A stretch of 64,000 bases of DNA, from assembly GCF_030684315.1 (NCBI RefSeq), contig NC_081383.1:3701690-3765689 (forward strand), written 5' to 3'. The position numbers were made by a program, and so were the translations under genes. This DNA comes from Stegostoma tigrinum. Taxonomy: Eukaryota. Within the stretch, counting starts at the first letter, position 1; every line of letters begins with the position of its first letter. The notes under the pieces were generated by a model. The model did not search any database. It was not told the DNA's origin and was given only the letters and a program-made list of their open reading frames with translations. Below, in pieces: positions 10,159-33,381 of the stretch.

Positions 10159-10349
10159 TCAGCAAGGACTCGACTGTGGGGAGTCATTCGGTGGGTTTTT
10201 TGAAGATCTGTTCTTGGATGTCAAAGGTTTCCCTTGTATCAGATCCTTGAAGAGCCGTTTACGAGTTAAATAAAGTAAAACTCCAATCCCCAGAAAGCTT
10301 GCTAGAGGGACAGAGAGACCGAGAATGACACCTCTCTGGTCCGGCTTCA
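10159..10349 (-). CDS. VCAM-like exon 8, transmembrane helix and cytoplasmic tail
   Basis: ttacag| acceptor in phase 1; LKPDQR-GVILGLSVPLASFLGIGVLLYL-TRKRLFK...SSPC*: hydrophobic helix followed by a basic stop-transfer cluster. Confidence 0.85.
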
Positions 10350-13300
10350 CTGTAACGCAAACAGAAAGGATTAATTTACCAAATGCCACAGTGTAACTGG
10401 AAAATCATTTCATAACTCACTCGCAAAAGGAGTTCTGCAGAGAGCTTATCCACCTGAAAAGGCAGAGAGTTGGGATAAAAGGCTCTTTTTCGGAATGGCA
10501 ACTGGTGACGAGCGGTGTCCCACAGGGTTCAGTGTTGGGGCTGCAGCTGCTCACTTTATATATTAATGACCTGAATGAAGGGACTGGGGGCATTCTGGTA
10601 AAGTTTGCTGATGATACAAAGATAGGTGGATGGGCAGGTAGTACTGAAGAGGTGGGGAAGCGGCTGAGAGATTTAGACAGTTTAGGAAAGTGGTCCAGGA
10701 AATGGCTGAAGAAATTCAATGTGAGTAAATGTGAGGTTTTGCACTTTGGAAAAAAGAATACAGGCATGGACTATTTTCTAAATGGTGAGAAAATTCACAA
10801 AACAGAGGTGCAAAGGGATCTGGGAGTGTTGGTCCAGGATTCTCTAAAGGTTAACTTTCAGGTAGAGTCCGTGATTAAAAAAGCGAATGTAATGTTGTCA
10901 TTTATCTCAAGAGGGTTGGAATATAAAAGCAGCGATGTGCTTCTGAGGCTTTATAAAGCTTTAGTTAGGCCCCATTTAGAATACTGTGTCCAATTTTGGG
11001 CCCCACACCTCAGGAAAGACATACTAGCCCTGGAGCGTGTCCAGCGGAGATTCACATGGATGATCCCTGGAATGGTAGGTTTAACGTATGATGAACGGCT
11101 AAGGATCCTGGGATTGTACTCATTAGAGTTTAGAAGGTTGAGGGGAGATCTAATAGAAACTTACAAGATAATGTATGGCATAGAAAGGGTGGACCCTGGA
11201 AAGTTGTTTCTGTTAGGTGGGGAGACTAGGACCCATGGGCACAGCCTTAAAATTAGAGGGGGTAAATTTAAACGGAAATGAGGAGACATTTCTTCAGCCA
11301 GAGAGTGGTGGGCCTGTGGAATTCATTGCCACGGAGTGCAGTAGAGGCCAGGATGTTAGATGTCTTCAAGGCAGAGATTGATAAATTCGTGATCTCACAA
11401 GGAATCAAGGGCTACAGGGAGAGTGCAGGGAAGTGGTATTGAAATGGCCATCAGCCATGATTAAATGGTGGAGTGGACTTGATGGGCGGAATGGCCTTAC
11501 TCCCACTCCTATGTCTTATGGTCTTACTTGATACATTAATTGTATTTCCTAATCTACAAATGCTGACTGTGAAGAATTTCCAGTGTTTCTTTCAGATTTC
11601 CACCATCTTTCTGGATCCGAAATGCATGAGAAACAATTCAACGTTATCTCCAGCTGCATTAGCAGGCCACACTTTGGAAATATTTTGTTGGGATGTTGTA
11701 AGGATGTGATGGACACCAGCAAAACGCAAGTTCTCTTCTCTTACTTTGTATCTTTTCCCTCAAGAGCTAGCCATATAGGGAACTTTCCAGATCTCTCTCA
11801 CTGCTCTTTCGTCTCTCTCTAATCCCTACTGACATTGTGATCCAGTGTATTCATACAATCCCTGCTGTGCAGAAAGAGGCCATTTGGCCCATCAAGACCA
11901 TACAGACGATCTGAAGAGCAGCCCACCCAGACCACAAACCCTGCATTTCTCACGGGTGATCCACTCAACCAGCATATCCCGGGACACTATGGGTTAATTT
12001 CTCGTGGATAATCCACCCTAACCTAACATCTTTGGACTGGTGCGAGGGGCGGGGAGGGGGGGGGGAGCTGGTGGGACAGAGCACTTGGAGGAAACACGCA
12101 CAGACAACAAATTCCACACAGTCGCCCGAAGCTGGAATCAATCCCAGGTCTCTGGCACTGAGAATCAGCAGGTGCTAACTTCTGAGCCATCGCAACCTAT
12201 AGACGGATTGTTTTCCCAAAGTGTTTAAAACTGTAAATGATCCCCCTCGCCACAGCCACCCATCACAGTCCACAGACCCACCAACAAACAAGATGCATGC
12301 AAAGGCCACTTGGCCCCTCAAGCCTGCTCTCCCATTTAATAAGATCTCGGCTGATCTGATTTTAACATCAAATCTACATTCCTGATAACTGTAAAACCCT
12401 GCCTTCACATCTGTTGATCTTAAATGATTTACTAACCTGAACCGATCTCCTACTCTGTGACCCAGCTGACTTTATTACACCCAAGATCTCATCCACCATT
12501 CGATTCTTATTGGCTATCTTGAAAGAAGTAATTACAATATAATTTTAAAAAGTGTACGAAAGACAAGTCTTCAGTCTCGTTTCACCCAGTCTCATTGATC
12601 AGCCATGATCATATTGATTTAGATTTTTATTACCACTCAAGTACAGGAGTGAAAAGTGTTGCCACAAACTGCAACATCTTTGGTACAGCCACTTAAGGTA
12701 AAAAAAACACAGGTACAAAGTAGTAAAAGTAGTAAACGAAACGGGTCAAAGGGATCTGTTCAGTTATCGGACCCTCCTCGTGCCTCAAATGCACGTAAAT
12801 ATAGTCTGGCTCAAGCTAGAGATGCCTTGGGTTTGTTGGGATAGGGTCAAATGCCACGGTTTGTGTAAAACCAAAAGAACTGCGGATGCTGTAAATCAAG
12901 AACAAAACAGAAGTTGCTGGAAATGCTCAGCAGGTCTGGCAGCATCTGTGAATGAGAAAACAAAGTTAATGTTTCTGCTCTGGTGGCCGTTCCCTGAGGC
13001 CGGAAGGTTAACTCTGTTTTTGCCTTCACAAATGCTGCCAGACATGTTGAGCCTTTCCAGCAACTTCTGTTTTTGTGCTATTCGTTTGTTTGTTTCCTTG
13101 ATATGCTGCAGTGCAGAACTAAACTGTGTTTGTGAATAGATATATGAAAAGCACATTTTTGAAATAAAAAACAAAGTTAATAAAATTAAGGCAAAGTAGA
13201 AGAATAAAGAATTAAGGGCTGAATGGCCTACCCCTGTTCGTATGTCTCAGCGGAATAACATTCAAAAGGAAACTGTATAAATATCCGAAAAGATAAATAT

Positions 13301-16300
13301 TTTCAGGGTTCTGTGGAAAAGCAGAGGTAGTCAGATGAATGGAGTAGCTCTTTCGAATTGGCCAGAACAGGCAAGATAGGCCGAATAGCCTAATCATATG
13401 ACAATTTGCCTCTGTCCAGTCTCTTTCTCAGGAGGGCGAGAGCTCTCTAGCTGTGCACTGTTCTCTCCCTGGGCCCTGCATGATGAAGCCTGTCTCTCTA
13501 AGCTCAGAGTGAACATACTCACATTGGACATTGAGCTGAGCCTCCAGCCTCACTGCTCCCAGTGGATTCTCCACGACACACTCATAAAGCCCGTGATCGT
13601 CAGGGCTCAGGGAATCGATTCTCAGCTCCGACTTTCCCCGGGAGGTGGAAATATTCCACCTCGGCTGCTCGCTCCCGGTCTCTCTCCTCCACGTGATGTT
13701 GGCTTCGGGGTTAGCATCTCCCTGGCAGGTTAGTACCAGTGTCTCCCTCTCCCTGGCACTGCCCCCTCCCTCGATGGAGACATTCCGAGGACCATCTGGT
13801 AATCAGAGAACAGACGTCAGCTCCTGCGAGGATTTCAGGCCCCATCTCCTCACCTCCCAGCAACTCCCTCCCGCCCTCAGCCCTGTACACCCAGTGACCC
13901 ACGCTGTCTCTCAGTACAACATCCTTCTGTTCCAAGCCTTCCATGACCTCTTCCCTCATAGAATCATCACATCATAGTGATTGGCAGAACCATTCAGGGA
14001 GGAATTAGACAGTTGTCTGGGAAGGAGGATGGACAGGGTAATGGGAAGGAGGATGGACAGGGTAATGGGAACAAGATGGGAGAATGGCATTCACTTGGAT
14101 ATCTAGCATTGACACAATGGGCCAAATGGCACCATTCTACACTATCCTGATCCTTTGGCTCCAATCTAATCCCACTTTCTAGTCCATGGTGCTGATGAGT
14201 ACAAGGTTGAGTGCAAATACAGTGACGTAGGCACGGTGGCTCAGTGGTTAGCACTGCTGCCTCACACTGCCAGGATCCAGGGTTTGATTCCACCCTCAGG
14301 CAACCGGCTGTGTGGAGTTTGCACGTCCTCCCCGTGTCTGTGTGGGTTTCTTCTGGGTGCTCCGGTCTCCCCTCTCAGTCCAAAGACATGCGGGCTAGGT
14401 GGATTGGCTATGGGAGTTACAGTACAGAGATAGGCGAATGGAGTGGGTCTGGGTCAGATGCTCTTCAGTGGGTTGGTGTGGCTCAATGGGCTGAATGGCC
14501 TGCTTCCACACTGTAGGGATTCTATGATTTATTAAATACTGATGAGGGATTTTTACATCGAGCACCATTTTTTGCAGTGAGTTCCTCAGATCTTCATAAA
14601 ATCTAGGAGCAGATGTAGGCCATTCAGCCCATCAAGTCTCCCTGCCATTCACCAAGACAATTTCTGATCTGATAGCCCTCAACTCCACATTCCTGTCTTT
14701 TCCCCACATCGCTCGATTTCCTTTTCGATTAAAATTCCGTTTCTAACTTAGCCTTGAATATACTTAATGACCCAACCTCGACAGCCCTCTGAGGTAAAGA
14801 ATTCCACAGATTTATTACCTGTCAAGAGAAAAAAATGTCATCTCTATCCTAATTGAGCAACTCTTGGCGTTTGACCACATCTACCAGGCAGGTTATAATT
14901 TTGTGTACCTCAGATAGATCTCCTGTTCCAAAGGAAACAACCCCATCCTTTTTATAACTGATATACTTGAAGAAATTAACAGTATTGAGACGAAAAAGGT
15001 ATTAGCTGTTTGATCAGCTTGGAGAATGGATACATCTCCAGGCCCAGATGATATATATTCCCCAGGCTGCCATTGGAAGTGAGGGAGGAGATTGCAGGGG
15101 GCCTAACATCAAGTTTTAATTTCTCTCTGGCCAAAGGTGGTGTACCGCAGGACTGGTGAACAGCTAATTTCAGATCATTATTCAACAGGTGGTAGGGATA
15201 ATCCAGGAAACTACAGGCCTGTGAATCTGAGGAACAGAATTATCTTCACTTGGAGAAAGGCAAGGCTTAATCTAGGAGAGTCAGCCTGGCTTTTGCTGAG
15301 GTAGAGCTCACGTCTAATGAATTTGATTGAGTTTTTTTTGAGGTGGTGATGAAGTGTGAGAATGTGGGTAGGGCAGTGATGGAGTCTGGAGGCAGACCTT
15401 TGGTATGGTTTTGACACGGTAGGCTGGTTATGAAGTTACGAGCCTATGAGACCCAGGGCACTTTGGTTTCAAAACTGGTTTAGCGGCAGTCAAAGGTTCT
15501 TTCAGTGACCAGGAGCCTGTGCTCAGTGGCACATTGCAGGTTTGGTTCTGGGTCCTTGGTGTTTGTAGTGCAAATTCGTAAATGTAAAGAGATGCACAAA
15601 ACAGGAAAATTGATGGCATGGTGAACAGTGAAGAGGAAAACCTTATATTACAGGAGGATATAGATGGGCTGATCAGAACAGTCGTAAATGGAATTTAATT
15701 TTGACAGGTGTGAGGTGATAGACTTTTGGGATGACTAACATGGCAAGGGATTACACAATGAGTGGTAGATCCCCAGGAAGTACAAAGGATGAGGAGAAAC
15801 TTTGCACATTCCTAGATCTTTGAAGGTACAGACAGGTATGGCAGCAGGAGGCATATGGGCTACTTACCTTCATTTGTCGAGATGTTGAATAAAAGAGCAC
15901 GGATGGTACACTGGAGATGTTTGAAATGATCGTTATGTCACAGCTGGAGTACTGTGCGCAGTTCTGGTCCCCACAGTAAGGGAAACAATGTGACAGTACA
16001 GGAGGGGGCTGCAGAGGAGATTCACCAGGATGTGGTCTGGGATGGAGAGTTTCAGCGATGCTAAGAGACTGGATAAGCCAGGGATGTTTTCTCTAGAGGA
16101 GAGAAGGCTGAGGGGTGGGACCCGTACAAAGTGAGGAGGGGATTGGTAGGACACATCCAAAGAAATCTTTCCCCATTGTACAGCCGTCAATAACCAGGTG
16201 CAGGGATTTGAGGAGTAGGACGGGTGGGGGAGCTGTTGGTCAGAGGGGATTTGAGGAGAAGCTTGAAAGGTTGGCAGAGTCAGGAACCATCAATACATTG

Positions 16301-19300
16301 AAGTATTTAGATGGGATTTCAAACACCATTGAATGCACTTCTCCTATTTCTGCGTTGATCTTTCTCTGCACCTTCTCTGTAGCTGCCACACTACGTTCTG
16401 TATCCTGTTCTATTACCGTGATGTATTTAAATGAGATATGGCTTGTCTGGATCGCACACAAAACAATATTCACTGGATGTGACAAGTATGTGACAATAAT
16501 GACTCAAATCAAACGAAATCAGGCTGAAGAACGGGACCAGGATGGATTGGTGCTCGATGACCAGCATAGCACAATGGCTGAATGGCCTTTCTCAGTGTTC
16601 TAATACCCTAGGGCTTTAAGAACACACTGTATGGTCTATGGAGTGAATGAGCAGAAGGAACAGGAGTAGGCCATTCAGCCCCTTGGACCTGCTCCACCAT
16701 TTCATAGGATCATTTCATCCCAAGGTTCAGTTCATTCATCTCATCCACTTTCCAGCCCTTTCCTTGTAAGCCTCGATTCCGCGACTGATCGAGAATGTAA
16801 CTCGGCCTCAGATGTACACAAGGACTCTGTCCCAATAGCTCTCTGTAGCAAGGAGTTCCAAAGATACTCAATCCTCCGAGAGAAGAAATTCCTCCTCATC
16901 TCAATCTTAAATTGGTGCTCCTTTATTCTGAGACTGTGATCTCTGGTCCCGGACTCTGCTATTGGTTGGAACATCCCCTCAGCATTTACTCTGTCTAACC
17001 TCTTAAGAATCCCATATCTTTCAATGGGTTCTTCTAAACTCCAGTGAGTAGAGTCCCAAACTGTTCAGCCTTTGCTCAGAAGGCAGTCCCTCCTCATAAG
17101 ACAATGAAATAATATGCAGGTCCACTTCTCATCCACACCACATTCATTCCACAGGGGCAGCACGGTGGTTCTGCAGTTAGCGGTGCTGTCTCACAGCACC
17201 AGGGACCTTGGTTCGATTCCAGCCTCAGGCAACTGTCTGTGTTGAGTTAATATGTTCTCCCTGCATGTGCAGGTTTCTTCTAGGTGCTCTGGTTTCCTCC
17301 CACAGTGCAAAGATGTGCAGTTTGAGTGGAGAGATAGTAGGAACTGCCCAAGCTGGACAATCTGAGATATTAAGGTGTAGAGCTGGATGAACACAGCAGG
17401 CCAAGCAGCATCAGAGGAGCAGGAAAGCTGACATTTCGGGCCTAGGCCCTTCTTCAGCAAATGAAGGAGGGTCTAGGCCCGAAACGTCAGCCTTCCTGCT
17501 CCTCTGATGCTGTTTGGCCTGCTGTGTTCCTCCAGCTCTACACCTTGTTATCTCAGCTTGGGTGGATTGGCCATGGGAAATGCAGGGTTACAGGAGTAGG
17601 GTGGGCCTGGGCAGACTGCTCTTCAGAGGGTTAGTGCGGACCTGATGGGCTGAATGGCCTTCTTCCACACTAAGGATTTCTGTAAAATGCACACCAGATC
17701 CTCATTCATTCTAGATCCGCTTCTCACTCAGGTTAAATTGAGTCCACAGCCTGATGCTGCTGTCTCAGTCTCCTGAAGGTTCAGCTCATTCAGCCATTAG
17801 CATCTGCTGAAGAACAACCCCACCTGGTGTTAGAAACAGGAAACGCTGTGATCGCTCAGCAAACTCAACAGTGAAGCTGGCAGAGACATTCATGATCCTG
17901 GATTATGACTGAGTCAGTAACAAGGAACTGTTCCAGGGCCACGAGGGCTGGTATTGATAGGGACACAGTTTCAGGAGGGTCAGTAGGGGAATTCAGACTG
18001 GAGATGGGGACACTTTTTATGCAGCGAATTGGCATGGTCTGGAGCACACTACCTGAAGAGAGTCTGGAAGCAGTTTCAGTTGTAGTTTTCAAAAGGAATT
18101 GAATAAATAATCAAATGTTTAAATGTACAGACTTTTGAGGAACGAGCTGAAAGTGCGACACTAACTTGACATCTCTTTCAAAGAGTCAGAACAGGCACTA
18201 TGGGCTGAATGGCCTCCTAGAAAGATCACAAGAAATTGGAACAGGAGGCCATTCAGCCCCTCGAGCCTGCTCTGCCACTGAGTAGGATCCTGGCTGAGCT
18301 GACATTCCTCACACCCACTTTCCTGCCCTTTCCTCACAGCCATTGATTTCTGACTGATCAGAAACCTATCGCTCTCAGCCTTGAATATACACAAGGACTC
18401 TGTCCCCACAGCTCTCTGTGGCAAGGGGGTTCCAAAAACTCAACTCTCTAACAGAAGAAATTCCTCCTCATCTCAGCCATAAATTGATGCCCTTTTATTC
18501 TGAGACTAGACTCTTAGGTCTCAGACTCAGGAGAAACATTGTCTCAGCATTGACCCCATCAAGTCCTTTAAGGATCCAACGTGTCTTCATGAGATCACCT
18601 CTCATTCTTCTCAACTCCTATGAGTAGAGTCCCAACCTGTTTAGCCTTTGCTAATAGGAATCCCTCCATACCAGGGACCATCCTAGTGAACACTCTCCAA
18701 ACTGCCTCCAATGAAATAAAATCTCTCCTCGTATAAAGGGCCAAACTGGTCACAGTACTCCAGATTCTGTGCTGATTTGCCTCTGTCCAGTCTCTTTCTC
18801 AGGATGGCAAGAGCTCTCTAGCTGTGCACTGTTCTCTCCCTGGGCCCTGCAATGATGAAGCCTGTCTGTCTAAGCTCAGAGTGAACATACTCACATTGGA
18901 CATTGAGTTGAGCCTCCAACCTCACTGCTCCCAGTGGATTCTCCACGACGCACTCATAAAGCCCGTGATCGTCAGGGCTCAGGGAATTGATTCTCAGCTC
19001 CGACTTTCCCCGGGAGGTGGAAATATTCCACCTCGGCTGCTCGCTCCCGGTCTTTCTCCTCCACGTGATGTTGGCTTCGGGGTTAGCATCTCCCTGGCAG
19101 GTTAGTGCCAGTGTCTCCCTCTCCCTGGCACTGCCCCCTCCCTCGATGGAGACGTTCCGAGGACCATCTGGTAATCAGAGAACAGACATCAGCTCCTCCA
19201 AAAACTGCAGGCACTCAGCCGCCTGCCAACCCAAAACCCAAAGACAAATACCCCTCACTCACCCCCACAACCCTCCACTCATTTCTGTTCTTCATTCCCA

Positions 19301-22300
19301 CGTGACTGAATATATCAAAGGGAAAACTTGCATTTATATATCGCTTTTCAGTGTCAGATTTTGCAAAAGCATAAGGTTGAGAGGGTGCAGAAAAGATTTG
19401 CAAGCATGTTGCCGGGGTTGGGGGGTTTCAGCGATAGGGAGAGGCTGACTAGGGGCTATTCTCCCTGGACTATTAGTAACTGAGGCATAACCTTAACGAG
19501 GTTTATAAAATCATGAGGGGCATGTCTGGAATTGAGGGTTTATTGATGACCGTGAATCTATTGTCGATCGTTGGAAAAACCCATCTGGGTCACTAATGTC
19601 CTTTAGGGAAGCAAACTACCATTCTTACCTAGTCTGGCCTACATGTGACTCCAGACCCACAGCAATGTGTTTGACTCCCAACTGCCCTCTGGGCGATTAG
19701 GGACAGGCAATAAATTCTGCCTGGCCAGCGACACCCCCATCCCGTAAATGAATAAAGAATAACCAAGTTTCCCTAGGTTGGGCTGGCCAAAACTAGAGAG
19801 GTATAAGTTTTAGGTGAGAGGGGAAAGATTTAAAAGGGGCCCGAGGGGAAATATTTTCACACAGAGGGTGGTGTGTGTATGGAATGAGCTGCCAGAGGAA
19901 GTGGTGGGGGCTGGTACAGTTACAATATTTAATAAGTATCTGGATGAGTATAGGAATAGGAAGGGTTTACAGGGATATGGGCCAAATGCTGGCAAATGGG
20001 ACTAGATTAATTTAGGATAAATAACCAGTGCAGATGGACCGAAGGGTGTGCTTCCACGCTGTATAATTATGTGGCTAAATGAGTAGTGGCTGTTATAGAA
20101 AATTAACTCATAGACGAGTGGGAAAAGTTATTAGGCTGCACGGGGCAGTTGATGGTGGGAGAGCTGGTGATGAAATCTGGAGGGCTGCGCTTCCTGGACC
20201 GTAACCCCCACTTCCCCTGCTCTCCAATGGTGGGTGTGGGGAGACCCAGGAGTGGGTCACGAAGCCCCCCCTCCCCTGAGGCTGCACCCTGCTGCACGGA
20301 GGCGGTGGCGGGGTGGGGGAGGGGGGTAGTACCCCTCAGCCCGCCGTGGAGAATGGGAGTGATTGGGAGGGTTAGACAGGAGGGGCATCTTCATTTTCAT
20401 CTTGTGTTAAGGCCACGGCCTCCAAACAGCGAGGAGCTGGTGCTTCATCTGCACCGGGATGGGCTGGCACCATTCGGGCTTTTCCAGAGCACTAGCCTGG
20501 GTTAACAAGCAGTAGCACCTCGAGCTCGGAGTGGCGGGGGGGGGGGGGGGGGGTCAACACGCAGGAGAAATGCACAGCTGCCATGGGTCAGTAAGCAAGA
20601 GGAGAGCGGCCTCACTGACTGACTCTGGGGTACGTGCATTGTAACTTTCAGACTAAAAAGTTTAACAAGACAGCGGTCGGGAAGCTAGTAAAGTCCACAT
20701 TGAGACCATCAGGCTGTAGGCTCCCGAGGCGGAATATGAGGCGCTGCTCCTCCAGGTGGTGTCATTGTGACACTGGAGGAGCCCCAGGATGGGCATGTCA
20801 CCCAGGGAGTGGGAGGGGGAGTTAAAATGTTTCGTGACCAGACGGTGTTGTCGTTTGTCACAAAACAGAGTGCAGGTGTTGCACAAAGCGGTCTCCGAGC
20901 CTCCGCTTGGATCCCCACCCCCCCCACCGCAGTGTGGAGGGGGCCCTCCAACCCCCCGGCCTCATCCCATGTCCAACCCTCCCCTCGACCTGACATAACC
21001 TGTCCAGCTTCTCTCCCACCTTTCCGCTCCTCCCATCTCACTGGCCAATCCCCACCAATCCCTACCCGCACTCACCCTGTCACCATCCCACCGACCTGCC
21101 CCAGCCATTCTCTCTCTATTTATCCATGAGCTGCATTCCCCCTCCCCCATTTCTGAAGAAGGGTCCTGACCCAAAACATCAGCTTTCCTGCACCTGGCCT
21201 GTGTTCCTGCAGCTCCACACTGTTATCTCTTCGTACATGTGACACAATATACAGGAACTTTAATAATTACATTGCTCTGTTACAGTGGCTGCTTTATTGC
21301 TGTTTAGTTTTTGTTGGTGTTTGGGGTCAGTTTGAAAAATAATACAGGAAGCGTCACTACAGGGATTCGTTCACAACAGTGCGGGTGACTCCAAATGAGC
21401 ATTTGAGGGACATCCTGTAAAGAGGCTTCGTGCTCAATCCCAGGCTGTTGCTCTAGTTTCAAAGCCTCCAGAAGACACCCGGCCCTTTGCTCCAGCCATT
21501 CAGTTATTAGGTGGCAGCTGCACTGAATTGGCCCCAGCTCCAAGCTCAGAGTGAGCATACTCACATTGGACATTGAGCTGAGCCTCCAGCCTCACTGCTC
21601 CCAGTGGATTCTCCACGACGCACTCATAAAGCCCGTGATCGTCAGGGCTCAGGGAATCGATTCTCAGCTCCGACTTTCCCCGGGAGGTGGAAATATTCCA
21701 CCTCGGCTGCTCGCTCCCGGTCTCTCTCCTCCACGTGATGTTGGCTTCGGGGTTAGCATCTCCCTGGCAGGTTAGTGCCAGTGTCTCCCTCTCCCTGGCA
21801 CTGCCCCCTCCCTCGATGGAGACGTTCCGAGGGCCATCTGGTAATCAGAGAACAGACATCAGCTCCTGCGAGGATTGCAGGCCCCATTTCCTCACCTCCC
21901 GCCCTCAGCTCTGTGCACCCAGTGACCCACACTGTCTCTTCAGTGCAGATAAAGGCCATTCGCACCGACAGATCTCACCCCATCCCTGTAAATCCACATT
22001 TACTGTAGTTAACTCACTTAACCTGCACACCTACAGGGCAATTTAGCATGGCCAGTCCACACTAACCTGCGCATCTTTGCACTGTGGGAGGAAACCAGAG
22101 ATAATCCACGCAGACACAGGGAGAACGTGTGAACTCCACACAGACAGTCGCCCGAGGCTGGGATCGAACCCGGGTCCCTGGTGCCGTGAGGCAGCAGCGC
22201 TAAAGAGGGGCGGCACGGTGTGTCAGTGCTTAGCACTGCAGCCTCACAGCGCCAGGGACCCGGGTTCGATTCCAGCCTCGGGCGAGCTTGCACATTCTCC

Positions 22301-25300
22301 CCGTGTCTGCGTGGGTTTCCTCCGGGTGCTCCGGTTTCCTCCCACAGTCCAAAGATATGCAGGATAGGTTAATTGGCCATGCTAAATTGCCCGTAGTGTT
22401 CAGGGGTGTGAGTGGGTTATAGGGGGATGGGTCTGGGTGGGATGCTCCAAGGGGCAGTGTGGACGTGTTGGGCCGAAGGGCCTGTTTCCACACTGTAGGG
22501 AATCTAAATTATCCATATCCATTAACCACTGAGCCACCGTGCCCACTGTCTCCGCTTCTCCCTTAATAACCACCCATAAACCTGGATCTTCAGTCACTGC
22601 ATGGTCCAGGAGCTGCCAACCCTCCGGAAATTAAAGAATAATCTTTAAAAGACTGTAAAGACAGTGTTTATTAATGGAAGTTAGAATTTGTACAGCACCT
22701 TTCATGACAATGAGATTCCAAACGACTTCACAATAAGTACTTTCGATGTGCCGTCACCGCTTCAATGTAGGCAATTATTTCCAAAACAATCTCGGGTAGA
22801 GTAGTGGGAAGAGCTGTGTGGCTGGGTGAGGGAGGTGGTTTTGGGAGATCCGACTATGAAACTTCCAGGGATATTTCAAGCGGAGTTGGCGAATCCAGGG
22901 AAGTGTTTGTTTCTGCTGGGTGAGCTGCAAAAGGAAATCTCTTGTCCCGGGAATCTGTGACGGAAATAACTCCAATTCCAGTTCCCGCAGTGTTCTCTCC
23001 TTTTCGGGACAATCCCCGTTTCCCGCTGAAAGGCAGTGACTGATAACGTATTTGCAACCTGGCGCCCGTTTGAAGAGTGCTAATGGGATCAGCATTCAGA
23101 GATTGGGGGGTTGCGGTTCTCATTTCATTCTGGAGACAGCTGCTGCACACTAATTAGAGGGAGGGCCATGGGTAGGTTTGCGACACAGTGAGACACCAGC
23201 AGTGCGGGTTCAAATTCTCACACTGGCTGAAGTTCCTGTGAAGGTTCTTACACCTCCCCTCACCTGAGATGGAGTAACCCACCAGTTGTCTGTCTCTCTC
23301 TCTCTGATGACAGACTAACCCATGGCAACTCAGAATTGGTTCGCAACAGAAATTTACAAAACTAACTGGAAGAAAGGAGGTCACCTTCCCAGGGTTGTTA
23401 AAAAAAAGAACAGGGCAGTGGGAGTAATTGAACAGCCCCAGCAAAGGCATGATGGGCCGAATGGCCTGCACCGTGTTTTCTGGAAAGTTGAAAGCACTCA
23501 CACCAAACTTCTACTGAGCTCAGACGTTGCGTGTGGCTTTCTCCATCGCTGATCTCACAGATGTAAGCTCCCCTGTCTTCAGGTTCCAGCTTTTCTATGT
23601 GGAGTGTTGAATATCTGGTTTTCTGGCTGATGTTCCAATGGGAAGGAGCCGTGCTGTCTGTGCTGGCTTTCCTCCAGGTGATTGTAGGGACATTGCTACT
23701 GTCTGCGCCACATGACAGGGACAGAGGCCTCCCAGCACGCCCCACCGTGTGAGCTGGTTCAATCCAGACATTGTAAAGTCCAGCTGTATTTAACACAGAG
23801 ACAAATTCAACAGGGAGATGCAGGTTTCAAAATAAAATTAAATTAAAGGAAAAAAAATCAAGCCCGCAGAGGAACTCAATGTGAAATGTAGCAGGAAGGC
23901 CAGGGAAAAGTGAGGAAGTCTCATAAACCCCAGCTTTAATGTCCTGCATCAGGAATCCTTCAGCAAATTGCCCGATTTAATCAGGCAGTGTCACTCTGAG
24001 GGACACCTTTTAAAGGAGGGTTTTTACAACAGGGGGTTTCCTTCTTAAGGGAACTGTCTCATCATAAGGGACCCCCTTTAAAAAGGGTCTCAGATTTACT
24101 GTTTCAGCAACAAAAGGATCCCCATCACCACCTTCCCAAGGACATTGAATGCAACATGAACATTTCCTCTGCATTCTCCATAGGATTATCTTTTCTTTAA
24201 CAACTCAGCCTGAAAACCTGGGCTTACGTGTTAGATTTGCTAATGGCATGGAAAGAGACCATTCAGCCCAACACCCCATGCTGGATCCCATTTTATTTGC
24301 TTCCGCCACCAGATGGATTCTTGGGATGGCAGGACTGTTATATGAGGAAAGATTGGATCGGTTAGGATTATATTCACTGGAGTTTAGAAGAGTGGAGTCA
24401 TTGGGGGATGTCTCGTAGAAACCGATAAGATTCTAACAGGACAAGACTAAACACAGGAAGGATGTTCCCAAAGGCTGGGGTCCCAGAACGCGGGTCACAG
24501 TTTAGGAATACAGGGTAGGTCACCTAGGCCTGAGAGGGGGAGAAATGTCTTCACCCAGAGAGTGGTGAGCCTGGGGAATTCTCTGCCACAGAAAACATTG
24601 TAGTATTTCAAGGAGGAATAAGATATAGTTCTTAAGGCTAAAGGGATCAAAAGTGAATGGGGAGAAAACAGGAACAGGGGATTGAGTTGGATGATCAGCC
24701 ACGGTCATATTGAATGATGGAACAGGCTCAAAGGGCTGAATGGCCTGCTCCTGCTCCAACATTCTATGCTCCCTATTTCAGCTCTTCAGAATATCTTTCT
24801 AATCACTCTATTTCATTACCAAATCAATTTTGAGATCAACGTCTTATTTCCCTGCAGGACTTATCACTAACTTTCTAGTAAATTTTGGTCCTTTTCGTTC
24901 TACAGTTTAAAAGCGGCCCTGACAACCCGCAGCCTGGGCTGACTCACAGTTCAGGTGGACCTCCAGTGTGCTGTTCTTGCTTCGGAATCGTGCTGCAGAT
25001 AGACCCAGGCGAATCTCACAGGTGAAGGTGATGTTTCTGTCCGCGCTAGCTGTTGTGTAGTTTTGATGAGAAACTGTGTGACACAGGTGGTCATACCTCA
25101 TTACTGCTGGCTTCTCAGCAGAGAAGAACTCTCGGTTGCGATACCAAAAAACTTCGACCGTGTGGCAGGGGTAAAGATTTTGCGCGGAACACCTAAGGGT
25201 CACTGTTTGTCCATCCATTGGATTAAGTGATTGCAGTTCCACTTTGGGATGGTGTGGGAATGCTGAAAGAAAGTCAGTACATTAAATTAATCCACCTTTC

Positions 25301-28300
25301 TGTCTCTTAATTAGAAATGTTGCCCACTACCCCCCTCCCCCGTCCTCCCTCTCTCTGTGTCGCTTTCTTTTCTTCAATTCCACTCATCTGAAGCAAACTG
25401 AAATACTCCATGTTCAAACACAGCAAGATCTGGACAATATAATAAAATGTGAGGCTGGATGAACACAGCAGGCCCAGCAGCATCTCAGGAGCACAAAAGC
25501 TGACGTTTCGGGCCTAGACCCTTCATCAGAGAGGGAGAAGGGGAGAGGGTTCTGGAATAAATAGGGAGAGAGGGGGAGGTGTACCAAAGATGGAGAGAAA
25601 AGAAGATAGGTACAGAGGAGAGTATAGGTGGGGAGGTAGGGAGGGGATAGGTCAGTCCAGGGAGGGAGGACGGACAGGTCAAGGAGGTGGGATGAAGTTA
25701 GTAGGTAGGAGATGGAGGTGCGGCTTGGGGTGGGAGGAAGGGATCGGTGAGAGGAAGAACAGGTTAGGGAGGCAGAGACAGGCTGGACTGGTTTTGGGAT
25801 GCAGTGGGTGGAGGGGAAGAGCTGGGCTGGTTGTGTGGTGCAGTGGGGGCAGGGGACGAACTGGGATGGTTTTGGGATGCGGTGGGGGAAGGGGAGATTT
25901 TGAAGCTGGTGAAGTCCACATTGATACCATTGGGCTGCAGGGTTCCCAAGCGGAATATGAGTTGCCTTGCCCCCACACCTCCTCCCTCACCCCTATCCCA
26001 GGCCCCAAGATGACTTTCCATATTAAGCAGAGATTCACCTGCACATCTGCCAATGCGGTATACTGCATCCACTGTACCCGGTGTGGCTTCCTCTACATTG
26101 GGGAAAACAAGCGGAGCCTTGGGGACCGCTTTGCAGAACACCTGCGCTCGGTTCGCAATAAACAACTGCACCTCCCAGTCGCGAACCATTTCCACTCCCC
26201 CTCCCATTCTTTAGATGACATGTCCATCATGGGCCTCCTGCAGTGCCACAATGATGCCACCCGAAGGTTGCAGGAACAGCAACTCATATTCCGCTTGGGA
26301 ACCCTGCAGCCCAATGGTTTCAATGTGGACTTCACCAGCTTCAAAATCTCCCCTTCCCCCACCGCATCCCTAAACCAGCCCAGTTCGTCCCCTGCCCCCA
26401 CTGCACCACACAACCAGCCCAGCTCTTCCCCTCCACCCACTGCATCCCAAAACCAGTCCAGCCTGTCTCTGCCTCCCTAACCTGTTCTTCCTCTCACCGA
26501 TCCCTTCCTCCCACCCCAAGCCGCACCTCCATCTCCTAGCTGCTAACCTCATCCCACCTCCTTGACCTGTCCGTCCTCCCTCCCTGGACTGACCTATCTC
26601 CTCCCTACCTCCCCACCTATACTCTCCTCTCCACCTATCTTCTTTTCTCTCCATCTTTGGTCCACCTCCCCCTCTCTCCCTATTTATTCCAGAACCCTCA
26701 CCCCATCCGCCTCTCTGATGAAAGGTCAAGGCCCGAAACGTCAGCTTTTGTGCTCCTGAGATGCTGCTGGGCCTGCTGTGTTCATCCAGCCTCTCATTTT
26801 ATTATCTTGGATTTTCCAGCATCTGCAGTTCCCATTATCACTGATACAAAAATAATTCTGTTTGTCTCTTTTCCTATTTCTTCCTCCATCGAACAGTTAT
26901 GCCCCTCTGCACCTATTCATGAGATCCATGGCAATGATTATTTCTCTCTGCCTTTAGCTTTGACCATCATTCTGATGAAAAGTCAGTGACTGGAAGGTTA
27001 ATGCTGTTTCTTTTCACAGACGCTGCTGAGTATTTTCAGTGTGTTCCACTTTAATTTCAGGTTTCCAGCATTCACAGAGATTTGCTTCTGTTTCGCTACC
27101 CATCTCTGACCCTCTCTCAGTTCCTGTCTGTCCCTCTGCTCCATCCTGCTTGTTTCTTTGGAAAAGCTGGGGCAGGGATGTTAAACAGGAAACACTGAAT
27201 GAGTAGACAACATAGCAAGCTCATTCGAATACACTTTCAGGACTCAATCTCCAGTTCAATGTTTTAGGGTCTGGGCACCTGCATTCATGTCATTAAACAA
27301 CACCCCCACCCCACCCCCGACCAACCCACCCAGCACCACACTCCACATGAGCAACTTTTAGCACTCCTAACCCATTCTCACCCAATTATCATCCCCAATA
27401 TCAGCTTATTTCACCCTGGTTCACCAGTATCCATCCCTCTGACTGCCAATCATTTCCTTTCTCTCTGGGCTCCATCTCTGCCCATCTGTTCACTTCCCCG
27501 TACCCCTTATTACTGCCTTCAGCATAGATACCACCTTTTTCTATCCATCAGCTTGGACTCTGCCTTCTCTTCACACATGCTGCCAGACCTGCTGAGTTCC
27601 ACCAGGATAATAGTGTGAGGCTGGATGAACACAGCAGGCCAAGCAGCATCTCAGGAGCACAAAAGCTGACGTTTTGGGCCTAGACCCTTCTCCAGCAGTT
27701 TGTTTTTAAATGATATTTTTTGTCTAACCTCTTGGCTGTCTGCAATTTACCAAACATTTCACTACTTACAATAAACTGCTAGATAAACATCCTTGGAATA
27801 GAACTTTCCCCTGCACATTGTGGTACATCTGTAGTTATTCTCATACGATTCTAGCACTTTGTCAATTCGGAGAACAGTCTTCGAAGGGGAATGGGTAATT
27901 TTCCCAGGCATAGAGTCGATGGCTTTCTCCCAGCTGGGCTTGCTGTTGGGACAGTGAGCATCACAGACCAACTCCACCGCCTGGCCCACACTCACAACAG
28001 GAGCCGTTGGGGCAATGTATAAAATGTCTTCCTTCCCGGTTACAAAGGCTGGAGAACAGACAAAGAAAGGTCTGAGTCAACCACAGAATTTGCTTTGCCA
28101 CAAAACACCGCTGCAGTAATCAATGGGACAGTACTGAGGGCAGCTTCCTTCACTCTAAGCACTGTCTGCGTGAATTCTACAGAAGACTCGTGTTCTGACA
28201 AAATCATACCAGACCCACAAATGCTGCCAGACCTGCTGAGTTTCTCCAGCACTGTTATTTATTTCACATTACCAGCATCTGTAAGGTCTTTTTTAAAAAA

Positions 28301-30527: not shown

Positions 30528-31668
30528 CTGGTCCTTTTTGTTTGGAATTTCTGTTATTTAAGGAAAATAACACACCATCTTCATTCACTCTAATTCTGAT
30601 ATCTGTGTAAACCCAAATCTATTAGGCTGAAGCTTCTCTGTGAATTTCAATTATTAACAGTAGCCTGTGTCCCCCCTGAGCAGCTCAGGGTTTCAATCCC
30701 TCTCTCTGCCCCTCTGTCTCAGAACTGAGAGCTGTAATAATTCATGGAGTTCTGATGTAACTCTTCGATCTTTTCCTGGAAGGAAAAGGGTTGCAACATA
30801 AAGCTGTCACTGCCAATTGTATTGTCTGTTCTGAGTCTCCCCCACCAACTAGCCTCAACAGATTTTGTGGGGTGGGGTTTAAATGTCTAACACCCTTTGT
30901 GTGAGGAATTCTATCCTAATATCATCCAAATACACCCCTGCCTCTGTTGCTGCTGAAATCCCTCATCCCACGGTGCCTCAGAACTTTGTGATTCTAATAC
31001 TTCCATCTTGGGGGCTGGTTAGCGCAGTTGGCTGGAGAGCCACTATGTGATGTGCAGTAACACAAAAGTGTGGGTTCATTCCTGCACTGGCTGAGGTTTC
31101 CCCCAAAGGGCTCTCCTTCACAACCTCTGTCCTTGCCTAAGGTGTGGTGACCCTCAGGTTAAGCCAGCACCAGTTTTCTCTCTCCCTGTCATGAGGAGGC
31201 AAGACTGGTAAGACTGTGGTAACTTTACCTTTGATTTCCATTTGCCACTCCACATGCATTTCTCTTCAGTCAAAACTCTGCTGCTTGCATCACATCTTGC
31301 AGTGGATCCTACACCTCGTCCTCTTCTTTCTGATCCATGTGAACGCAGAGATTATATCAATTTTAACATTTCCATTTTTGACTTCACCTCTCCATTTCTG
31401 TAACTTCCTCCAACTCTGAGATACCTCTGTCCATCCAATGGATGACACCCATTTCCATTCCTCTGACACTATCCCTCTTTCCCTGTCTCTCTTCTCCTTC
31501 CATGTGCCCTTTTAAATACTACTTCATGGCCTAAGCTTTTGGTAATGTCTTAATATCTTCTCAAATAACTCAGTGCCAAATTATCAGCATTCTGGGAAAT
31601 GCCTTGTGGGGAGGGGGGGGGCAGGGGAGTATACTATGCAAAGGGTGCTATGCAAATCTAAATTGTTT

Positions 31669-33381
31669 CAGTGATAATGGGAACTGCAGATGCTGGAGAA
31701 TCCGAGATAATAAAAACGTGAGGCTGGATGAACACAGCAGGCCAAGCAGCATCTCAGGAGCACAAAAGCTGACGTTTCGGGCCTAGACCCTTCATCAGAG
31801 AGGGGGATGGGGAGAGGGTTCTGGAATAAATAGGGAGAGAGGGGGAGGCGGACCGAAGATGGAGAGAAAAGAAGATAGGTGGAGAGGAGAGTATAGGTGG
31901 GGAGGTAGGGAGGGGATAGGTCAGTCCAGGGAAGATGGACAGGTCAAGGAGGTGGGATAAGGTTAGTATGTAGGAGATGGGGGTGCGGCTTGGGGTGAGA
32001 GGAAGAACAGGTTAGGGAAGCAGAGACAGGTTGGACTGGTTTTGGGATGCAGTGGGTGGAGGGGAAGAGCTGGGCTGGTTGTGTGGTGCAGTGGGGGGAG
32101 GGGACAAACTGGGCTGGTTTAGGGATGCGGTGGGGGAAGGGGAGATTTTGAAACTGGTGAAGTCCACATTGATACCATTAGGCTGCAGGGTTCCCAGGCA
32201 GAATATGAGTTGCTGTTCCTGCAACCTTTGGGTGGCATCATTGTGGCATTGCAGGAGGCCCATGATGCACATGTCATCTAAAGAATGGGAGGGGGAGTGG
32301 AAATGGTTTGCGACTGGGAAGTGCAGTTGTTTGTTGCGAACTGAGCAGAGGTGTTCTGCAAAGCGGTCCCCAAGCCTTCGCTTGGTTTCCCCAATGTAGA
32401 GGAAGCCGCACCGGGTACAGTGGATGCAGTATACCACATTGGCAGATGTGCAGGTGAACCTCTGCTTAATGTGGAATGTCATCTTGGGGCCTCGGATAGG
32501 GGTGAGGGAGGAGGTGTGGGGGCAAGTGTAACATTTCCTGCGGTTGCAGGGGAAGGTGCCAGGTGTGGTGGGGTTGGAGTGCAGTGTGGAGCGAACAAGG
32601 GAGTCACAGAGAGAGTGGTCTCTCCGGAAAGCAGACAGGGGTGGGGATGGAAAAATGTCTTGGGTGGTGGGGTCGGATTGTAGATGGCGGAAGTGTCGGA
32701 GGATGATGCGTTGTATCCGGAGGTTGGTGGGGTGGTGTGTGAGAACGAGGGGGATCCTCTTTGGGCGATTGTGGCGGGGGCGGGGTGTGAGGGATGTGTT
32801 GCGGGAAATACGGGAGACGTGGTCAAGGGCGTTCTCGATCACTGTGGGGGGAAAGTTGCGGTCCTTGAAGAACTTGGACATCTGGGATGTGCGGGAGTGG
32901 AATGTCTTATCGTGGGAGTAGATGTGGCGGAGGCGGAGGAATTGGGAATAGGGGATGGAATTTTTGCAGGAGGGTGGGTGGGAGGAGGTGTATTCTAGGT
33001 AGCTGTGGGAGTCGGTGGGCTTGAAATGGACATCAGTTACAAGCTGGTTGCCTGAGATGGAGACTGAGAGGTCCAGGAAGGTGAGGGATGTGCTGGAGAT
33101 GGCCCAGGTGAACTGAAGGTTGGGGTGGAAGGTGTTGGTGAAGTGGATGAACTGTTCGAGCTCCTCTGGGGAGCAAGAGGCGGCGCCGATACAGTCAATG
33201 TACCGGAGGAAGAGGTGGGGTTTGGGACCTGTGTAGGTGCGGAAGAGGGACTGTTCCACGTAACCTACAAAGAGGCAGGCATAGCTGGGGCCCATGCGGA
33301 TGCCCATGGCCACCCCCTTAGTCTGTAGGAAGTGGTGCTCCTGAGATGTTGCTTGGCCTGCTGTGTTCATCCAGCCTCACA
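31669..33381 (-). mobile_element. Penelope-like element, young and 5'-truncated, with RT C-terminal half and GIY-YIG endonuclease in one 452-aa ORF (32012-33370)
   Basis: QTKGVAMG..MGPSYA, RYID(D missing)C, NVVYCIHCTRCGFLYIGETKRRLGDRFAEH; an inverted copy of the 3' tail sits at 33335-33381. Confidence 0.95.
31771..31798 (-). ncRNA. minimal hammerhead ribozyme motif (Penelope-type)
   Basis: CUGAUGA-AGGGUCUAGGCCC-GAAACGUC. Confidence 0.65.

What the first reader, a model, noticed from the sequence alone, without database searches (positions are those of the whole stretch)
13523..21837. VCAM/MAdCAM-like adhesion receptor whose stalk is built from three near-identical Ig exons
Seen: three 273-nt phase-1/phase-1 exons with intact splice sites. 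They differ by only 4-7 nt pairwise (all transitions; 3 amino-acid changes in total) and each encodes three N-glycosylation sequons (NVS, NIT, NIS). They resemble D3 (WNIS...L.I..L.P.D.G.Y.C), so D3 looks like an older duplicate. Known: mammalian VCAM-1 is lengthened by a D1-3/D4-6 duplication giving two IDS sites, and MAdCAM-1 by a mucin stalk. Inference: this gene uses a third design, one integrin-binding head on a modular glycosylated Ig spacer. Symmetric phases would let exon skipping or unequal crossover set reach at 3-6 Ig domains.
Basis: partly seen in the sequence, partly recalled or inferred. Interest (0 to 1): 0.8.

Follow-up and report, generated by a model that had tools for sequence, protein, structure and literature searches.

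The report
Shark adhesion gene with triplicated Ig exon
A zebra-shark cell-adhesion gene related to VCAM-1 and MAdCAM-1 carries three almost identical immunoglobulin-domain exons in its stalk, apparently kept alike by copying between them; the gene is already in the public annotation under a misleading name.

Summary
On the minus strand lie three 273-nt phase-1/phase-1 exons (13523-13795, 18895-19167, 21565-21837). They differ at 4, 5 and 7 positions, all transitions, giving 3 amino-acid changes, and each carries NVS, NIT and NIS sequons.

They belong to a gene with two 5' exons, D1, D2, D3, R3, R2, R1 and a TM/tail exon. Its product is exactly RefSeq XP_048415371.1, 'hemicentin-2-like' [Stegostoma tigrinum], which includes all three repeats.

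D1 matches human VCAM-1 D1 best by sequence (E 1.8e-5). By fold it matches VCAM-1 and MAdCAM-1 equally (TM 0.82 and 0.81). The Asp of 'IDS' is invariant in 18 of 18 aligned relatives.

The design is not unique to this gene. Six other elasmobranch species, a chimaera, gar and sturgeon have the same head with 1 to 8 R domains.

R copies group by species, the homologous tracts are only 329-423 bp with unrelated introns beyond, and R-exon GC is raised. Concerted evolution by gene conversion is the best explanation.

RefSeq isoforms in other species do differ by single Ig domains. VCAM-1 versus MAdCAM-1 orthology stays unresolved.

On another piece of this genome the scan noted an ICAM cluster with a homogenised last Ig domain; I did not check that note.

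The parts
31229..31259 (-). 5' coding exon of the RefSeq model (MHVEWQMEIK + 1 nt), donor GTAAAG. It lies upstream of the signal peptide, so this ATG may not be the start used.
   Evidence: sequence of P0061
30470..30549 (-). Signal-peptide exon: internal ATG at 30527, MGTRIAFLLFTFSVLIQDS, phase-1 donor GTAGGT
   Evidence: matches P0061
27770..28048 (-). D1 exon (279 nt): head domain with CxxxC...CxxxC cysteines and the AIDSMPG motif
24948..25262 (-). D2 exon (315 nt): second Ig domain (Pfam C1-set E 2.5e-7, Ig_2 E 7.9e-7)
23502..23783 (-). D3 exon (282 nt): I-set Ig domain, the older relative of R
21565..21837 (-). R3, first repeat in the transcript (273 nt); shares 63 nt of acceptor-side intron with R1
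18895..19167 (-). R2, second repeat (273 nt), with K and N substitutions; shares about 119 nt of donor-side intron with R1
13523..13795 (-). R1, third repeat (273 nt), with the V substitution
10159..10349 (-). Last coding exon: transmembrane segment, 34-residue tail and stop codon
   Evidence: no Pfam hit; 52% identity to the Cetorhinus tail

Best explanation
This is the zebra-shark member of a fish family of integrin-ligand-type IgSF adhesion receptors related to VCAM-1 and MAdCAM-1. It has one D1-D2 head whose C-D-loop Asp (IDS) is the presumed alpha4-integrin contact. The head sits on a stalk of D3 plus three R domains, followed by a single TM helix and a short tail. The R exon was duplicated in tandem in an ancestor of elasmobranchs (timing inferred). 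Since then the copies have been repeatedly homogenised by short-tract gene conversion, and copy number has changed by unequal exchange. That is why the exons are 97-98% alike while the introns between them are unrelated. All three copies are under purifying selection and are spliced into the annotated mRNA, giving a six-Ig ectodomain. The stalk is presumably a glycosylated spacer that sets how far the head stands from the membrane (inferred). Shown: the anatomy, the family, within-species clustering of copies, and the short mosaic tracts. Inferred: integrin binding, the conversion mechanism, and the spacer role.
For: Anatomy and identity with XP_048415371.1. Head: D1's best PDB sequence hit is human VCAM-1 D1 with IDS aligned on QIDSPL (E 1.8e-5), and human MAdCAM-1 comes next among adhesion heads (E 0.05). 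The AF2 model of D1 has pLDDT 89.7, and its best superpositions are VCAM-1 (TM 0.82, rmsd 1.7) and MAdCAM-1 (TM 0.81, rmsd 1.6). Asp44 is invariant in 18 of 18 aligned sequences. Family: the same D1-D2-D3-R architecture occurs in Heptranchias, Carcharodon, Cetorhinus, Heterodontus, two Chiloscyllium species, Rhincodon, Callorhinchus, Lepisosteus and Acipenser, with 1, 2, 3 or 7-8 R domains. Conversion: R copies cluster by species. Supports (bootstrap/SH-aLRT) are Carcharodon 93/96, Cetorhinus 96/85, Heterodontus 92/92 and Rhincodon 86/90, and Stegostoma 99/66. Within-species amino-acid identity is 92-99%, against 88-92% between Stegostoma and Rhincodon and 82-86% between the two lamniforms. 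Homology between copies spans only 423, 363 and 329 bp, with different end points for each pair and no other non-TE intron similarity. In Heptranchias the two R domains are 9/22 identical at the start and 61/69 identical afterwards, as a partial conversion tract would leave. R exon GC is 0.58-0.60 against 0.47-0.52 for D1-D3. Selection: pN/pS is 0.11-0.24, and flank divergence (3-6%) is close to pS (5-6%).
Against: Repeated independent recent duplications are therefore not excluded. With three copies, every variable site is a singleton, so there is no internal phylogenetic signal for conversion. Copy counts in other species rest on RefSeq models whose assemblies may collapse or expand repeats. 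Integrin binding is inferred from one conserved Asp and from the fold only. The flanking residues vary among the chondrichthyan sequences (IDS, MDS, IDL, RDS, TDI).
Confidence: 0.7

Rival explanations
1. The three exons arose by very recent tandem duplications in the Stegostoma lineage, with parallel duplications in other sharks, and without any gene conversion.
For: Copies cluster by species. Copy number differs among lineages: 1, 2, 3 or 7-8. Every difference among the three copies is a singleton.
Against: A recent unequal-crossover duplication should copy intron as well. Here similarity stops 26-120 bp from the exon, at a different place for each pair, and the 2.4-kb and 5.1-kb introns share nothing but dispersed repeats. 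This reading needs a separate recent duplication in at least six lineages. The sister genera Stegostoma and Rhincodon both have three copies, and the two lamniforms both have two. The Heptranchias pair is mosaic within the exon.
Confidence: 0.17
2. Assembly artefact: a single R exon was expanded into three by misassembly.
For: Near-identical repeats are error-prone in assembly.
Against: Each copy has its own unique flanks and its own private substitutions. An independent assembly of Rhincodon also encodes three R domains. Four runs of the same organism hold about 70% of the sampled words of 18850-24849; this is not copy-resolved and may include the source sample.
Confidence: 0.04
3. Only one or two of the R exons are normally spliced in, and the others are cassette or decaying exons. 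The six-Ig RefSeq model would then be a maximal form rather than the common one.
For: RefSeq isoforms that lack exactly one Ig domain exist in Heptranchias (X2, X3), Cetorhinus (X2, X3) and Acipenser (X1 versus X2 differ by 92 residues). No RNA data for Stegostoma were seen.
Against: All three copies keep identical acceptor and donor sequences and open frames, with pN/pS of 0.11-0.24. Only one Stegostoma model, containing all three, was returned.
Confidence: 0.09

Closest known systems
VCAM-1 (CD106) of bony vertebrates
   Same: D1 has the same fold (TM 0.82, rmsd 1.7). It has the extra cysteine pair and an I-D-S motif aligned with QIDSPL. The stalk is all-Ig, the protein has a single TM and a short tail, and R is most like VCAM-1 D3/D6 (26%, E 1e-8). 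Alternative splicing of whole Ig domains (6D and 7D forms) is known for VCAM-1 (abstract of PMC2119261, search listing).
   Different: The shark gene has only one D1-type head. Bat, loach and gar VCAM1 have two, from the D1-3/D4-6 duplication. In the D1-D2 tree the VCAM1 clade (100/99) excludes the shark genes. Gar has both vcam1b and a member of the shark-like family. Shark D2 gave no BLAST hit to bat VCAM-1 at E 1e-3.
MAdCAM-1 of tetrapods
   Same: D1 superposes equally well (TM 0.81, rmsd 1.6). In the library search, D1 scored better against reptile MAdCAM-1 (E 7e-15) than against bat VCAM-1 (E 5e-7). D2 hits turtle MAdCAM-1 (E 6e-8). It has one head only. Shark D3 groups with the membrane-proximal Ig of reptile MAdCAM-1 at 89/90.
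   Different: There is no mucin-like Ser/Thr/Pro stalk. The motif is IDS, not LDT. The relationship is unresolved: AU p 0.17 for shark plus tetrapod MAdCAM.
RefSeq 'vascular cell adhesion protein 1-like' of sharks, chimaera and gar, and 'CEACAM5-like' of sturgeon
   Same: They share the domain order D1-D2-D3-R(n)-TM. Identity to the window's exons is 52-74% in D1/D2 for sharks, and R is 37% identical to sturgeon R. This is the family the window's gene belongs to.
   Different: The number of R domains differs: 1 in Callorhinchus and gar; 2 in Carcharodon, Cetorhinus, Chiloscyllium and Heptranchias; at least 2 in the truncated Heterodontus model; 3 here and in Rhincodon; 7-8 in sturgeon. Heptranchias also duplicated D3. 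Gar adds a Ser/Thr-rich segment before the TM.
Concerted evolution of Ig-domain exons by gene conversion in other IgSF receptors (Siglec-11/16, CEACAM families)
   Same: Paralogous Ig-coding segments are kept nearly identical within a species by conversion (titles and abstracts of PMC5701461 and PMC2832619 in the listing).
   Different: Those cases involve exons of different genes. Here the partners are tandem exons inside one gene, so conversion homogenises the domains of a single polypeptide.

Membership tests
VCAM-1 (orthologue) | N-terminal Ig domain with the extra disulfide and an acidic residue in the C-D loop (QIDSPL-type motif) | tested here: met
   phmmer against PDB gives VCAM-1 D1 at E 1.8e-5 with IDS aligned. 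Fold TM 0.82. Asp invariant in 18/18.
VCAM-1 (orthologue) | Two integrin-binding modules from the D1-3/D4-6 internal duplication (seven-domain form) | tested here: not met
   The window holds a single D1-type exon and P0061 has one head. Bat, gar and loach VCAM1 each show two D1-D2 modules.
VCAM-1 (orthologue) | Groups with the VCAM1 clade in a head-domain tree | tested here: inconclusive
   The VCAM1 clade (100/99) excludes the shark genes. However, the four clades form an unresolved star with no outgroup, and holding shark plus VCAM1 together costs only 0.19 lnL (AU p 0.47).
VCAM-1 (orthologue) | Conserved gene neighbourhood | not tested
   I recognised no non-TE neighbour gene among the window's ORFs of 110 aa or more. 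No other locus could be fetched.
MAdCAM-1 (orthologue) | Single D1-D2 head with a C-D-loop Asp (LDT-type motif) | tested here: met
   One head, and the Asp aligned with the MAdCAM Asp in 18/18 sequences. Fold TM 0.81 to 9p95_C. The flanking residues differ (IDS against LDT).
MAdCAM-1 (orthologue) | Mucin-like Ser/Thr/Pro-rich stalk | tested here: not met
   All exons between D2 and the TM exon are Ig domains and P0061 has no such segment.
MAdCAM-1 (orthologue) | Groups with MAdCAM-1 in trees | tested here: inconclusive
   The D1-D2 tree is unresolved. Shark D3 groups with the last Ig of reptile MAdCAM at 89/90, on long branches.
Fish D1-D2-D3-R(n)-TM family (RefSeq 'VCAM1-like') | Domain order and sequence similarity across all domain types | tested here: met
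   Exon-by-exon BLAST to Cetorhinus, Heptranchias and Callorhinchus. The chondrichthyan clade has 100/99 support. P0061 is the exact product.
Hemicentin-2 (the RefSeq name) | Secreted giant protein with a VWA domain, dozens of Ig modules, and EGF and fibulin-type modules (recalled, from no call) | tested here: not met
   The product has 665 residues, six Ig domains and a TM segment. Only Ig-class Pfam families matched any exon at or above Pfam's curated cut-off.
Concerted evolution by gene conversion | Paralogous copies are more alike within than between species | tested here: met
Concerted evolution by gene conversion | Short homology tracts with abrupt, pair-specific ends in otherwise unrelated flanks | tested here: met
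   Tracts of 423, 363 and 329 bp.
Concerted evolution by gene conversion | Copies are orthologous by position between species, so the duplication is older than the species split | not testable with these tools

The most novel reading that the evidence does not exclude
The gene is the cartilaginous-fish orthologue of MAdCAM-1. A published survey lists MADCAM1 only for terrestrial vertebrates (PMC7916592, passages read). On this reading the ancestral addressin stalk was a tandem array of R-type Ig domains, whose number drifts by unequal exchange and is kept uniform by gene conversion. The mucin stalk of teleosts and tetrapods replaced that array later, with gar (D3 + R + Ser/Thr-rich segment) as an intermediate form. 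Skipping of single R exons would then give graded receptor lengths within one animal.
Probability: 0.3. Interest if true: 0.6.

Novelty: new variant of a known kind. Interest (0 to 1): 0.42.

Why it matters
It gives a clean example of concerted evolution acting on tandem exons inside one gene, so that the domains of a single adhesion receptor stay alike while their number changes between lineages (1 to 8). It shows that the RefSeq name 'hemicentin-2-like' is wrong. It also places a one-headed, Ig-stalked receptor beside VCAM-1 and MAdCAM-1 at the base of jawed vertebrates. This makes two questions testable: how leukocyte-homing ligands acquired their stalks, and whether stalk length matters for integrin engagement. 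The gene and its three repeats are already in public annotation, and Ig-exon duplication with conversion is a familiar process. The surprise to a specialist is therefore moderate.

Tried and rejected
I have no depth, junction or copy-number data.

Transcript fragments in the protein collection: a search with the R1 exon, which sees only proteins of 50-157 aa, found no candidate. That says nothing about longer proteins.

VCAM-1 versus MAdCAM-1 orthology: a D1-D2 tree and AU tests left four clades unresolved, and I had no ICAM outgroup. The domain tree gives hints only, on long branches.

Synteny: the window's ORFs of 110 aa or more looked like Ig exons or transposon remnants, judged by eye and not scanned, so no neighbour gene was available.

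D2 against PDB gave only weak C1-set-type hits and no VCAM-1 or MAdCAM-1 among the 60 listed.

The top library hit P0001 (Narcine, 2368 aa, 17 stretches) turned out to be an SRCR protein with many Ig repeats, not a relative of the head. I left it out of the trees.

Rows dropped from the trees:
- One search left out the Cetorhinus X2 R domain (same sequence as the first R of X3) and the two bat D1-type segments.
- One search left out the partial P0016 and the softshell-turtle fragment. Naja P0008 and P0018 gave no full D1-D2 match.
- One search used six of the ten chondrichthyan proteins parsed plus 18 chosen domains of eight other proteins.

Literature: searches found no paper describing this gene family's repeats in sharks. 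I read passages of PMC10450919, PMC13262535 and PMC7916592; for the others I saw only listings and abstract starts. Supplementary files were not opened. I did not use the third homologous-protein search because the family was no longer open.

Full report
**Observation**

The repeat finder reports one direct-repeat family of three copies at 13496-13795, 18868-19167 and 21538-21837, 97-98% identical. Read on the minus strand, each copy contains a 273-nt exon: 13523-13795 (R1), 18895-19167 (R2) and 21565-21837 (R3). Each exon is preceded by ...TCTGATTACCAG and followed by GTGAGTATG, and is open only in the frame that leaves 2 nt at the start and 1 nt at the end. Both flanking introns are therefore phase 1.

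The copies differ at 7, 4 and 5 positions over 8 variable sites. All 8 are transitions and 3 of the 8 are in CpG context. These give three amino-acid differences (V/A, E/K, D/N). Each copy encodes NVS, NIT and NIS. Each copy matches Pfam I-set at E about 1e-13. A tblastn of the R peptide against the window found no further copy, only D3 at 38% identity.

**The gene**

Other minus-strand exons with good splice sites and the same phase are:
- D1, 27770-28048
- D2, 24948-25262
- D3, 23502-23783
- a last coding exon, 10159-10349, encoding a hydrophobic segment, a short tail and the stop codon

A signal-peptide exon has its ATG at 30527, and a small 5' exon lies at 31229-31259.

A word search started from a related shark protein returned P0061 (665 aa). 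This is NCBI XP_048415371.1, 'hemicentin-2-like' [Stegostoma tigrinum]. Its sequence is exactly these exons in the order D1, D2, D3, R3, R2, R1, TM. The window is therefore zebra-shark DNA, and the public gene model already includes all three repeats.

The name is a misnomer. Only Ig-class Pfam families reach Pfam's cut-offs on the exons, and the protein is a 665-residue type I membrane protein. I did not search a spliced model of my own in public tools; exons were searched one at a time.

**The head**

- D1 alone finds human VCAM-1 D1 as its best solved relative (E 1.8e-5), with its IDS aligned on VCAM-1's QIDSPL. Human MAdCAM-1 follows at E about 0.05.
- In an exhaustive library search, the D1 hits after the chondrichthyan proteins include reptile and frog MAdCAM-1 (E 7e-15 to 1e-8) and bat, loach and gar VCAM1 (E 5e-7 to 3e-5).
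- An AlphaFold2 model of D1, built on an 18-sequence alignment, has mean pLDDT 89.7.
- The model superposes best on VCAM-1 D1 (TM 0.82, rmsd 1.7 Å) and MAdCAM-1 D1 (TM 0.81, rmsd 1.6 Å). NCAM2 Ig1 has the lowest Foldseek E-value but a lower TM of 0.76.
- In that alignment the Asp of IDS, both cysteines of the first pair, one cysteine of the second pair and the Trp are invariant in 18 of 18 sequences.

'VCAM/MAdCAM-like head' is therefore a fair description.

**The family**

The same architecture is annotated, mostly as 'vascular cell adhesion protein 1-like', in the following species:

| Species | Architecture after D1-D2 |
|---|---|
| Heptranchias | D3 x2, R x2 |
| Carcharodon | D3, R x2 |
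| Cetorhinus | D3 and two R domains, read across isoforms X2 and X3 |
| Heterodontus | D3, at least 2 R (model truncated) |
| Chiloscyllium punctatum and C. plagiosum | D3, R x2 |
| Rhincodon | D3, R x3 |
| Callorhinchus | D3, R x1 |

It also occurs in ray-finned fishes:
- Sturgeon 'CEACAM5-like' has D1-D2, a D3-like domain, six or seven near-identical R domains and one divergent R before the TM.
- Gar 'VCAM1-like' has D1-D2-D3-R followed by a Ser/Thr-rich segment.
- Gar also has vcam1b with two heads.

The 'third design' is thus an old, widespread architecture, not a feature of this gene alone.

**Why the copies are alike**

- In trees of the stalk domains, D3 and R form separate clades and each contains a chimaera member. 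The D3/R split is therefore older than the chimaera-shark divergence.
- Within R, the copies group by species and not by position. Supports are Carcharodon 93/96, Cetorhinus 96/85, Heterodontus 92/92 and Rhincodon 86/90, and Stegostoma 99/66.
- Within-species amino-acid identity is 92-99%. It is 88-92% between Stegostoma and Rhincodon and 82-86% between the two lamniforms.
- In the window, similarity between copies covers only 423 bp (R1/R2), 363 bp (R1/R3) and 329 bp (R2/R3).
- R1 shares about 119 nt of donor-side intron with R2 only, and 63 nt of acceptor-side intron with R3 only. The rest of the 2.4-kb and 5.1-kb introns share nothing except dispersed repeats.
- Divergence in the shared flanks (3-6%) equals synonymous divergence (pS 0.046-0.061), and pN/pS is 0.11-0.24.
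- R-exon GC is 0.58-0.60, against 0.47-0.52 for D1-D3.
- In Heptranchias the two R domains are 9/22 identical at the N-terminal end and 61/69 identical thereafter.

Together these fit an old duplication followed by repeated short-tract gene conversion, with copy number changing by unequal exchange. They fit poorly with a series of independent recent duplications, which should have carried intron along.

The decisive test is copy-for-copy intron orthology between species.

**Results against, or missing**

- No run on record as RNA holds the stretch.
I worked beside that place and sent none of its letters to any search tool afterwards.
- A search for short protein fragments with the R exon was blank.
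- For Stegostoma there is therefore no direct evidence on splicing, on expression or on the assembly, beyond the RefSeq model and the distinct flanks of each copy.
- Indirect support for domain skipping comes from RefSeq isoforms elsewhere. Heptranchias X2 lacks one R and X3 lacks one D3. Cetorhinus X2 has one R and X3 lacks D3. Sturgeon X1 and X2 differ by one 92-residue R.
- Whole-domain splicing is known for mammalian VCAM-1 (abstract of PMC2119261).

**Orthology**

A D1-D2 tree gives four well-supported clades: VCAM1 100/99, tetrapod MAdCAM-1 97/96, ray-finned family 95/93 and chondrichthyan family 100/99. Their mutual order is unresolved.
- The ML tree joins sharks with the ray-finned family at only 44/10.
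- Holding sharks with VCAM1 costs 0.19 lnL (AU p 0.47).
- Holding sharks with tetrapod MAdCAM costs 2.25 lnL (p 0.17).

In the domain tree, shark D3 joins the last Ig of reptile MAdCAM-1 (89/90). The sturgeon's membrane-proximal R falls among shark R domains (93/90). VCAM1 D3/D6/D7 form their own clade (88/91). All of these are on long branches.

These hints lean toward the MAdCAM-1 side but do not settle it. A published survey places VCAM1 back to cartilaginous fish and lists MADCAM1 only for terrestrial vertebrates (PMC7916592, passages read). My paper searches found no description of the repeated stalk in sharks. Supplementary files were not opened.

**Verdict**

The feature is real and correctly described, and the gene is already annotated under a wrong name. 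Gene conversion among tandem exons best explains the near-identity of the three exons. Their role as a length-setting glycosylated spacer, and any tuning by exon skipping, remain inferences. It is a new variant within a known kind of receptor and of moderate interest.

Noticed in passing
window 31229-31259 and 30470-30549: The RefSeq model starts at an ATG in a small upstream exon, which puts 18 residues in front of the signal peptide. Carcharodon, Cetorhinus, Heptranchias and Heterodontus models start at the Met that corresponds to 30527, so the upstream start may be an annotation artefact or an upstream ORF.
   Followed up: partly
window 10340-10360 (acceptor of the last coding exon): Relatives read F-T/P-V-K-P at the junction of the last R with the TM exon, whereas the Stegostoma model reads L-K-P. 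The genomic letters 6 nt upstream would encode the longer form but are not preceded by AG. The acceptor therefore seems to have shifted by two codons in this species.
   Followed up: no
window 32015-33376 (-), 25435-25965 / 26279-26809, 31707-32213: A 454-codon ORF ends in a stretch that I recalled as a GIY-YIG-type (Penelope-like) motif; I did not scan it. Related tail fragments form a 96.6% inverted pair inside the D1-D2 intron and a 91% direct copy upstream of the gene.
   Followed up: no
window 10397-11278 (+) and 58287-59317 (+): ORFs that look like LINE reverse transcriptase, judged by eye and not scanned. One lies in the intron between R1 and the TM exon.
   Followed up: no
protein P0001 (Narcine bancroftii, 2368 aa; not in the window): An electric-ray protein with SRCR domains followed by about 17 nearly identical Ig domains and a TM segment. 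It is another elasmobranch receptor with a homogenised Ig array and is unrelated to the VCAM-like head.
   Followed up: partly
proteins P0007 and P0014 (frogs; not in the window): The frog MAdCAM-1 models contain two nearly identical D1-D2-mucin modules in tandem. This is a separate lineage-specific duplication of the whole head.
   Followed up: no
protein P0088 (Lepisosteus; not in the window): Gar 'VCAM1-like' combines D3 and one R with a Ser/Thr-rich segment of about 130 residues before the TM. This looks like an intermediate between an Ig stalk and a mucin stalk.
   Followed up: partly
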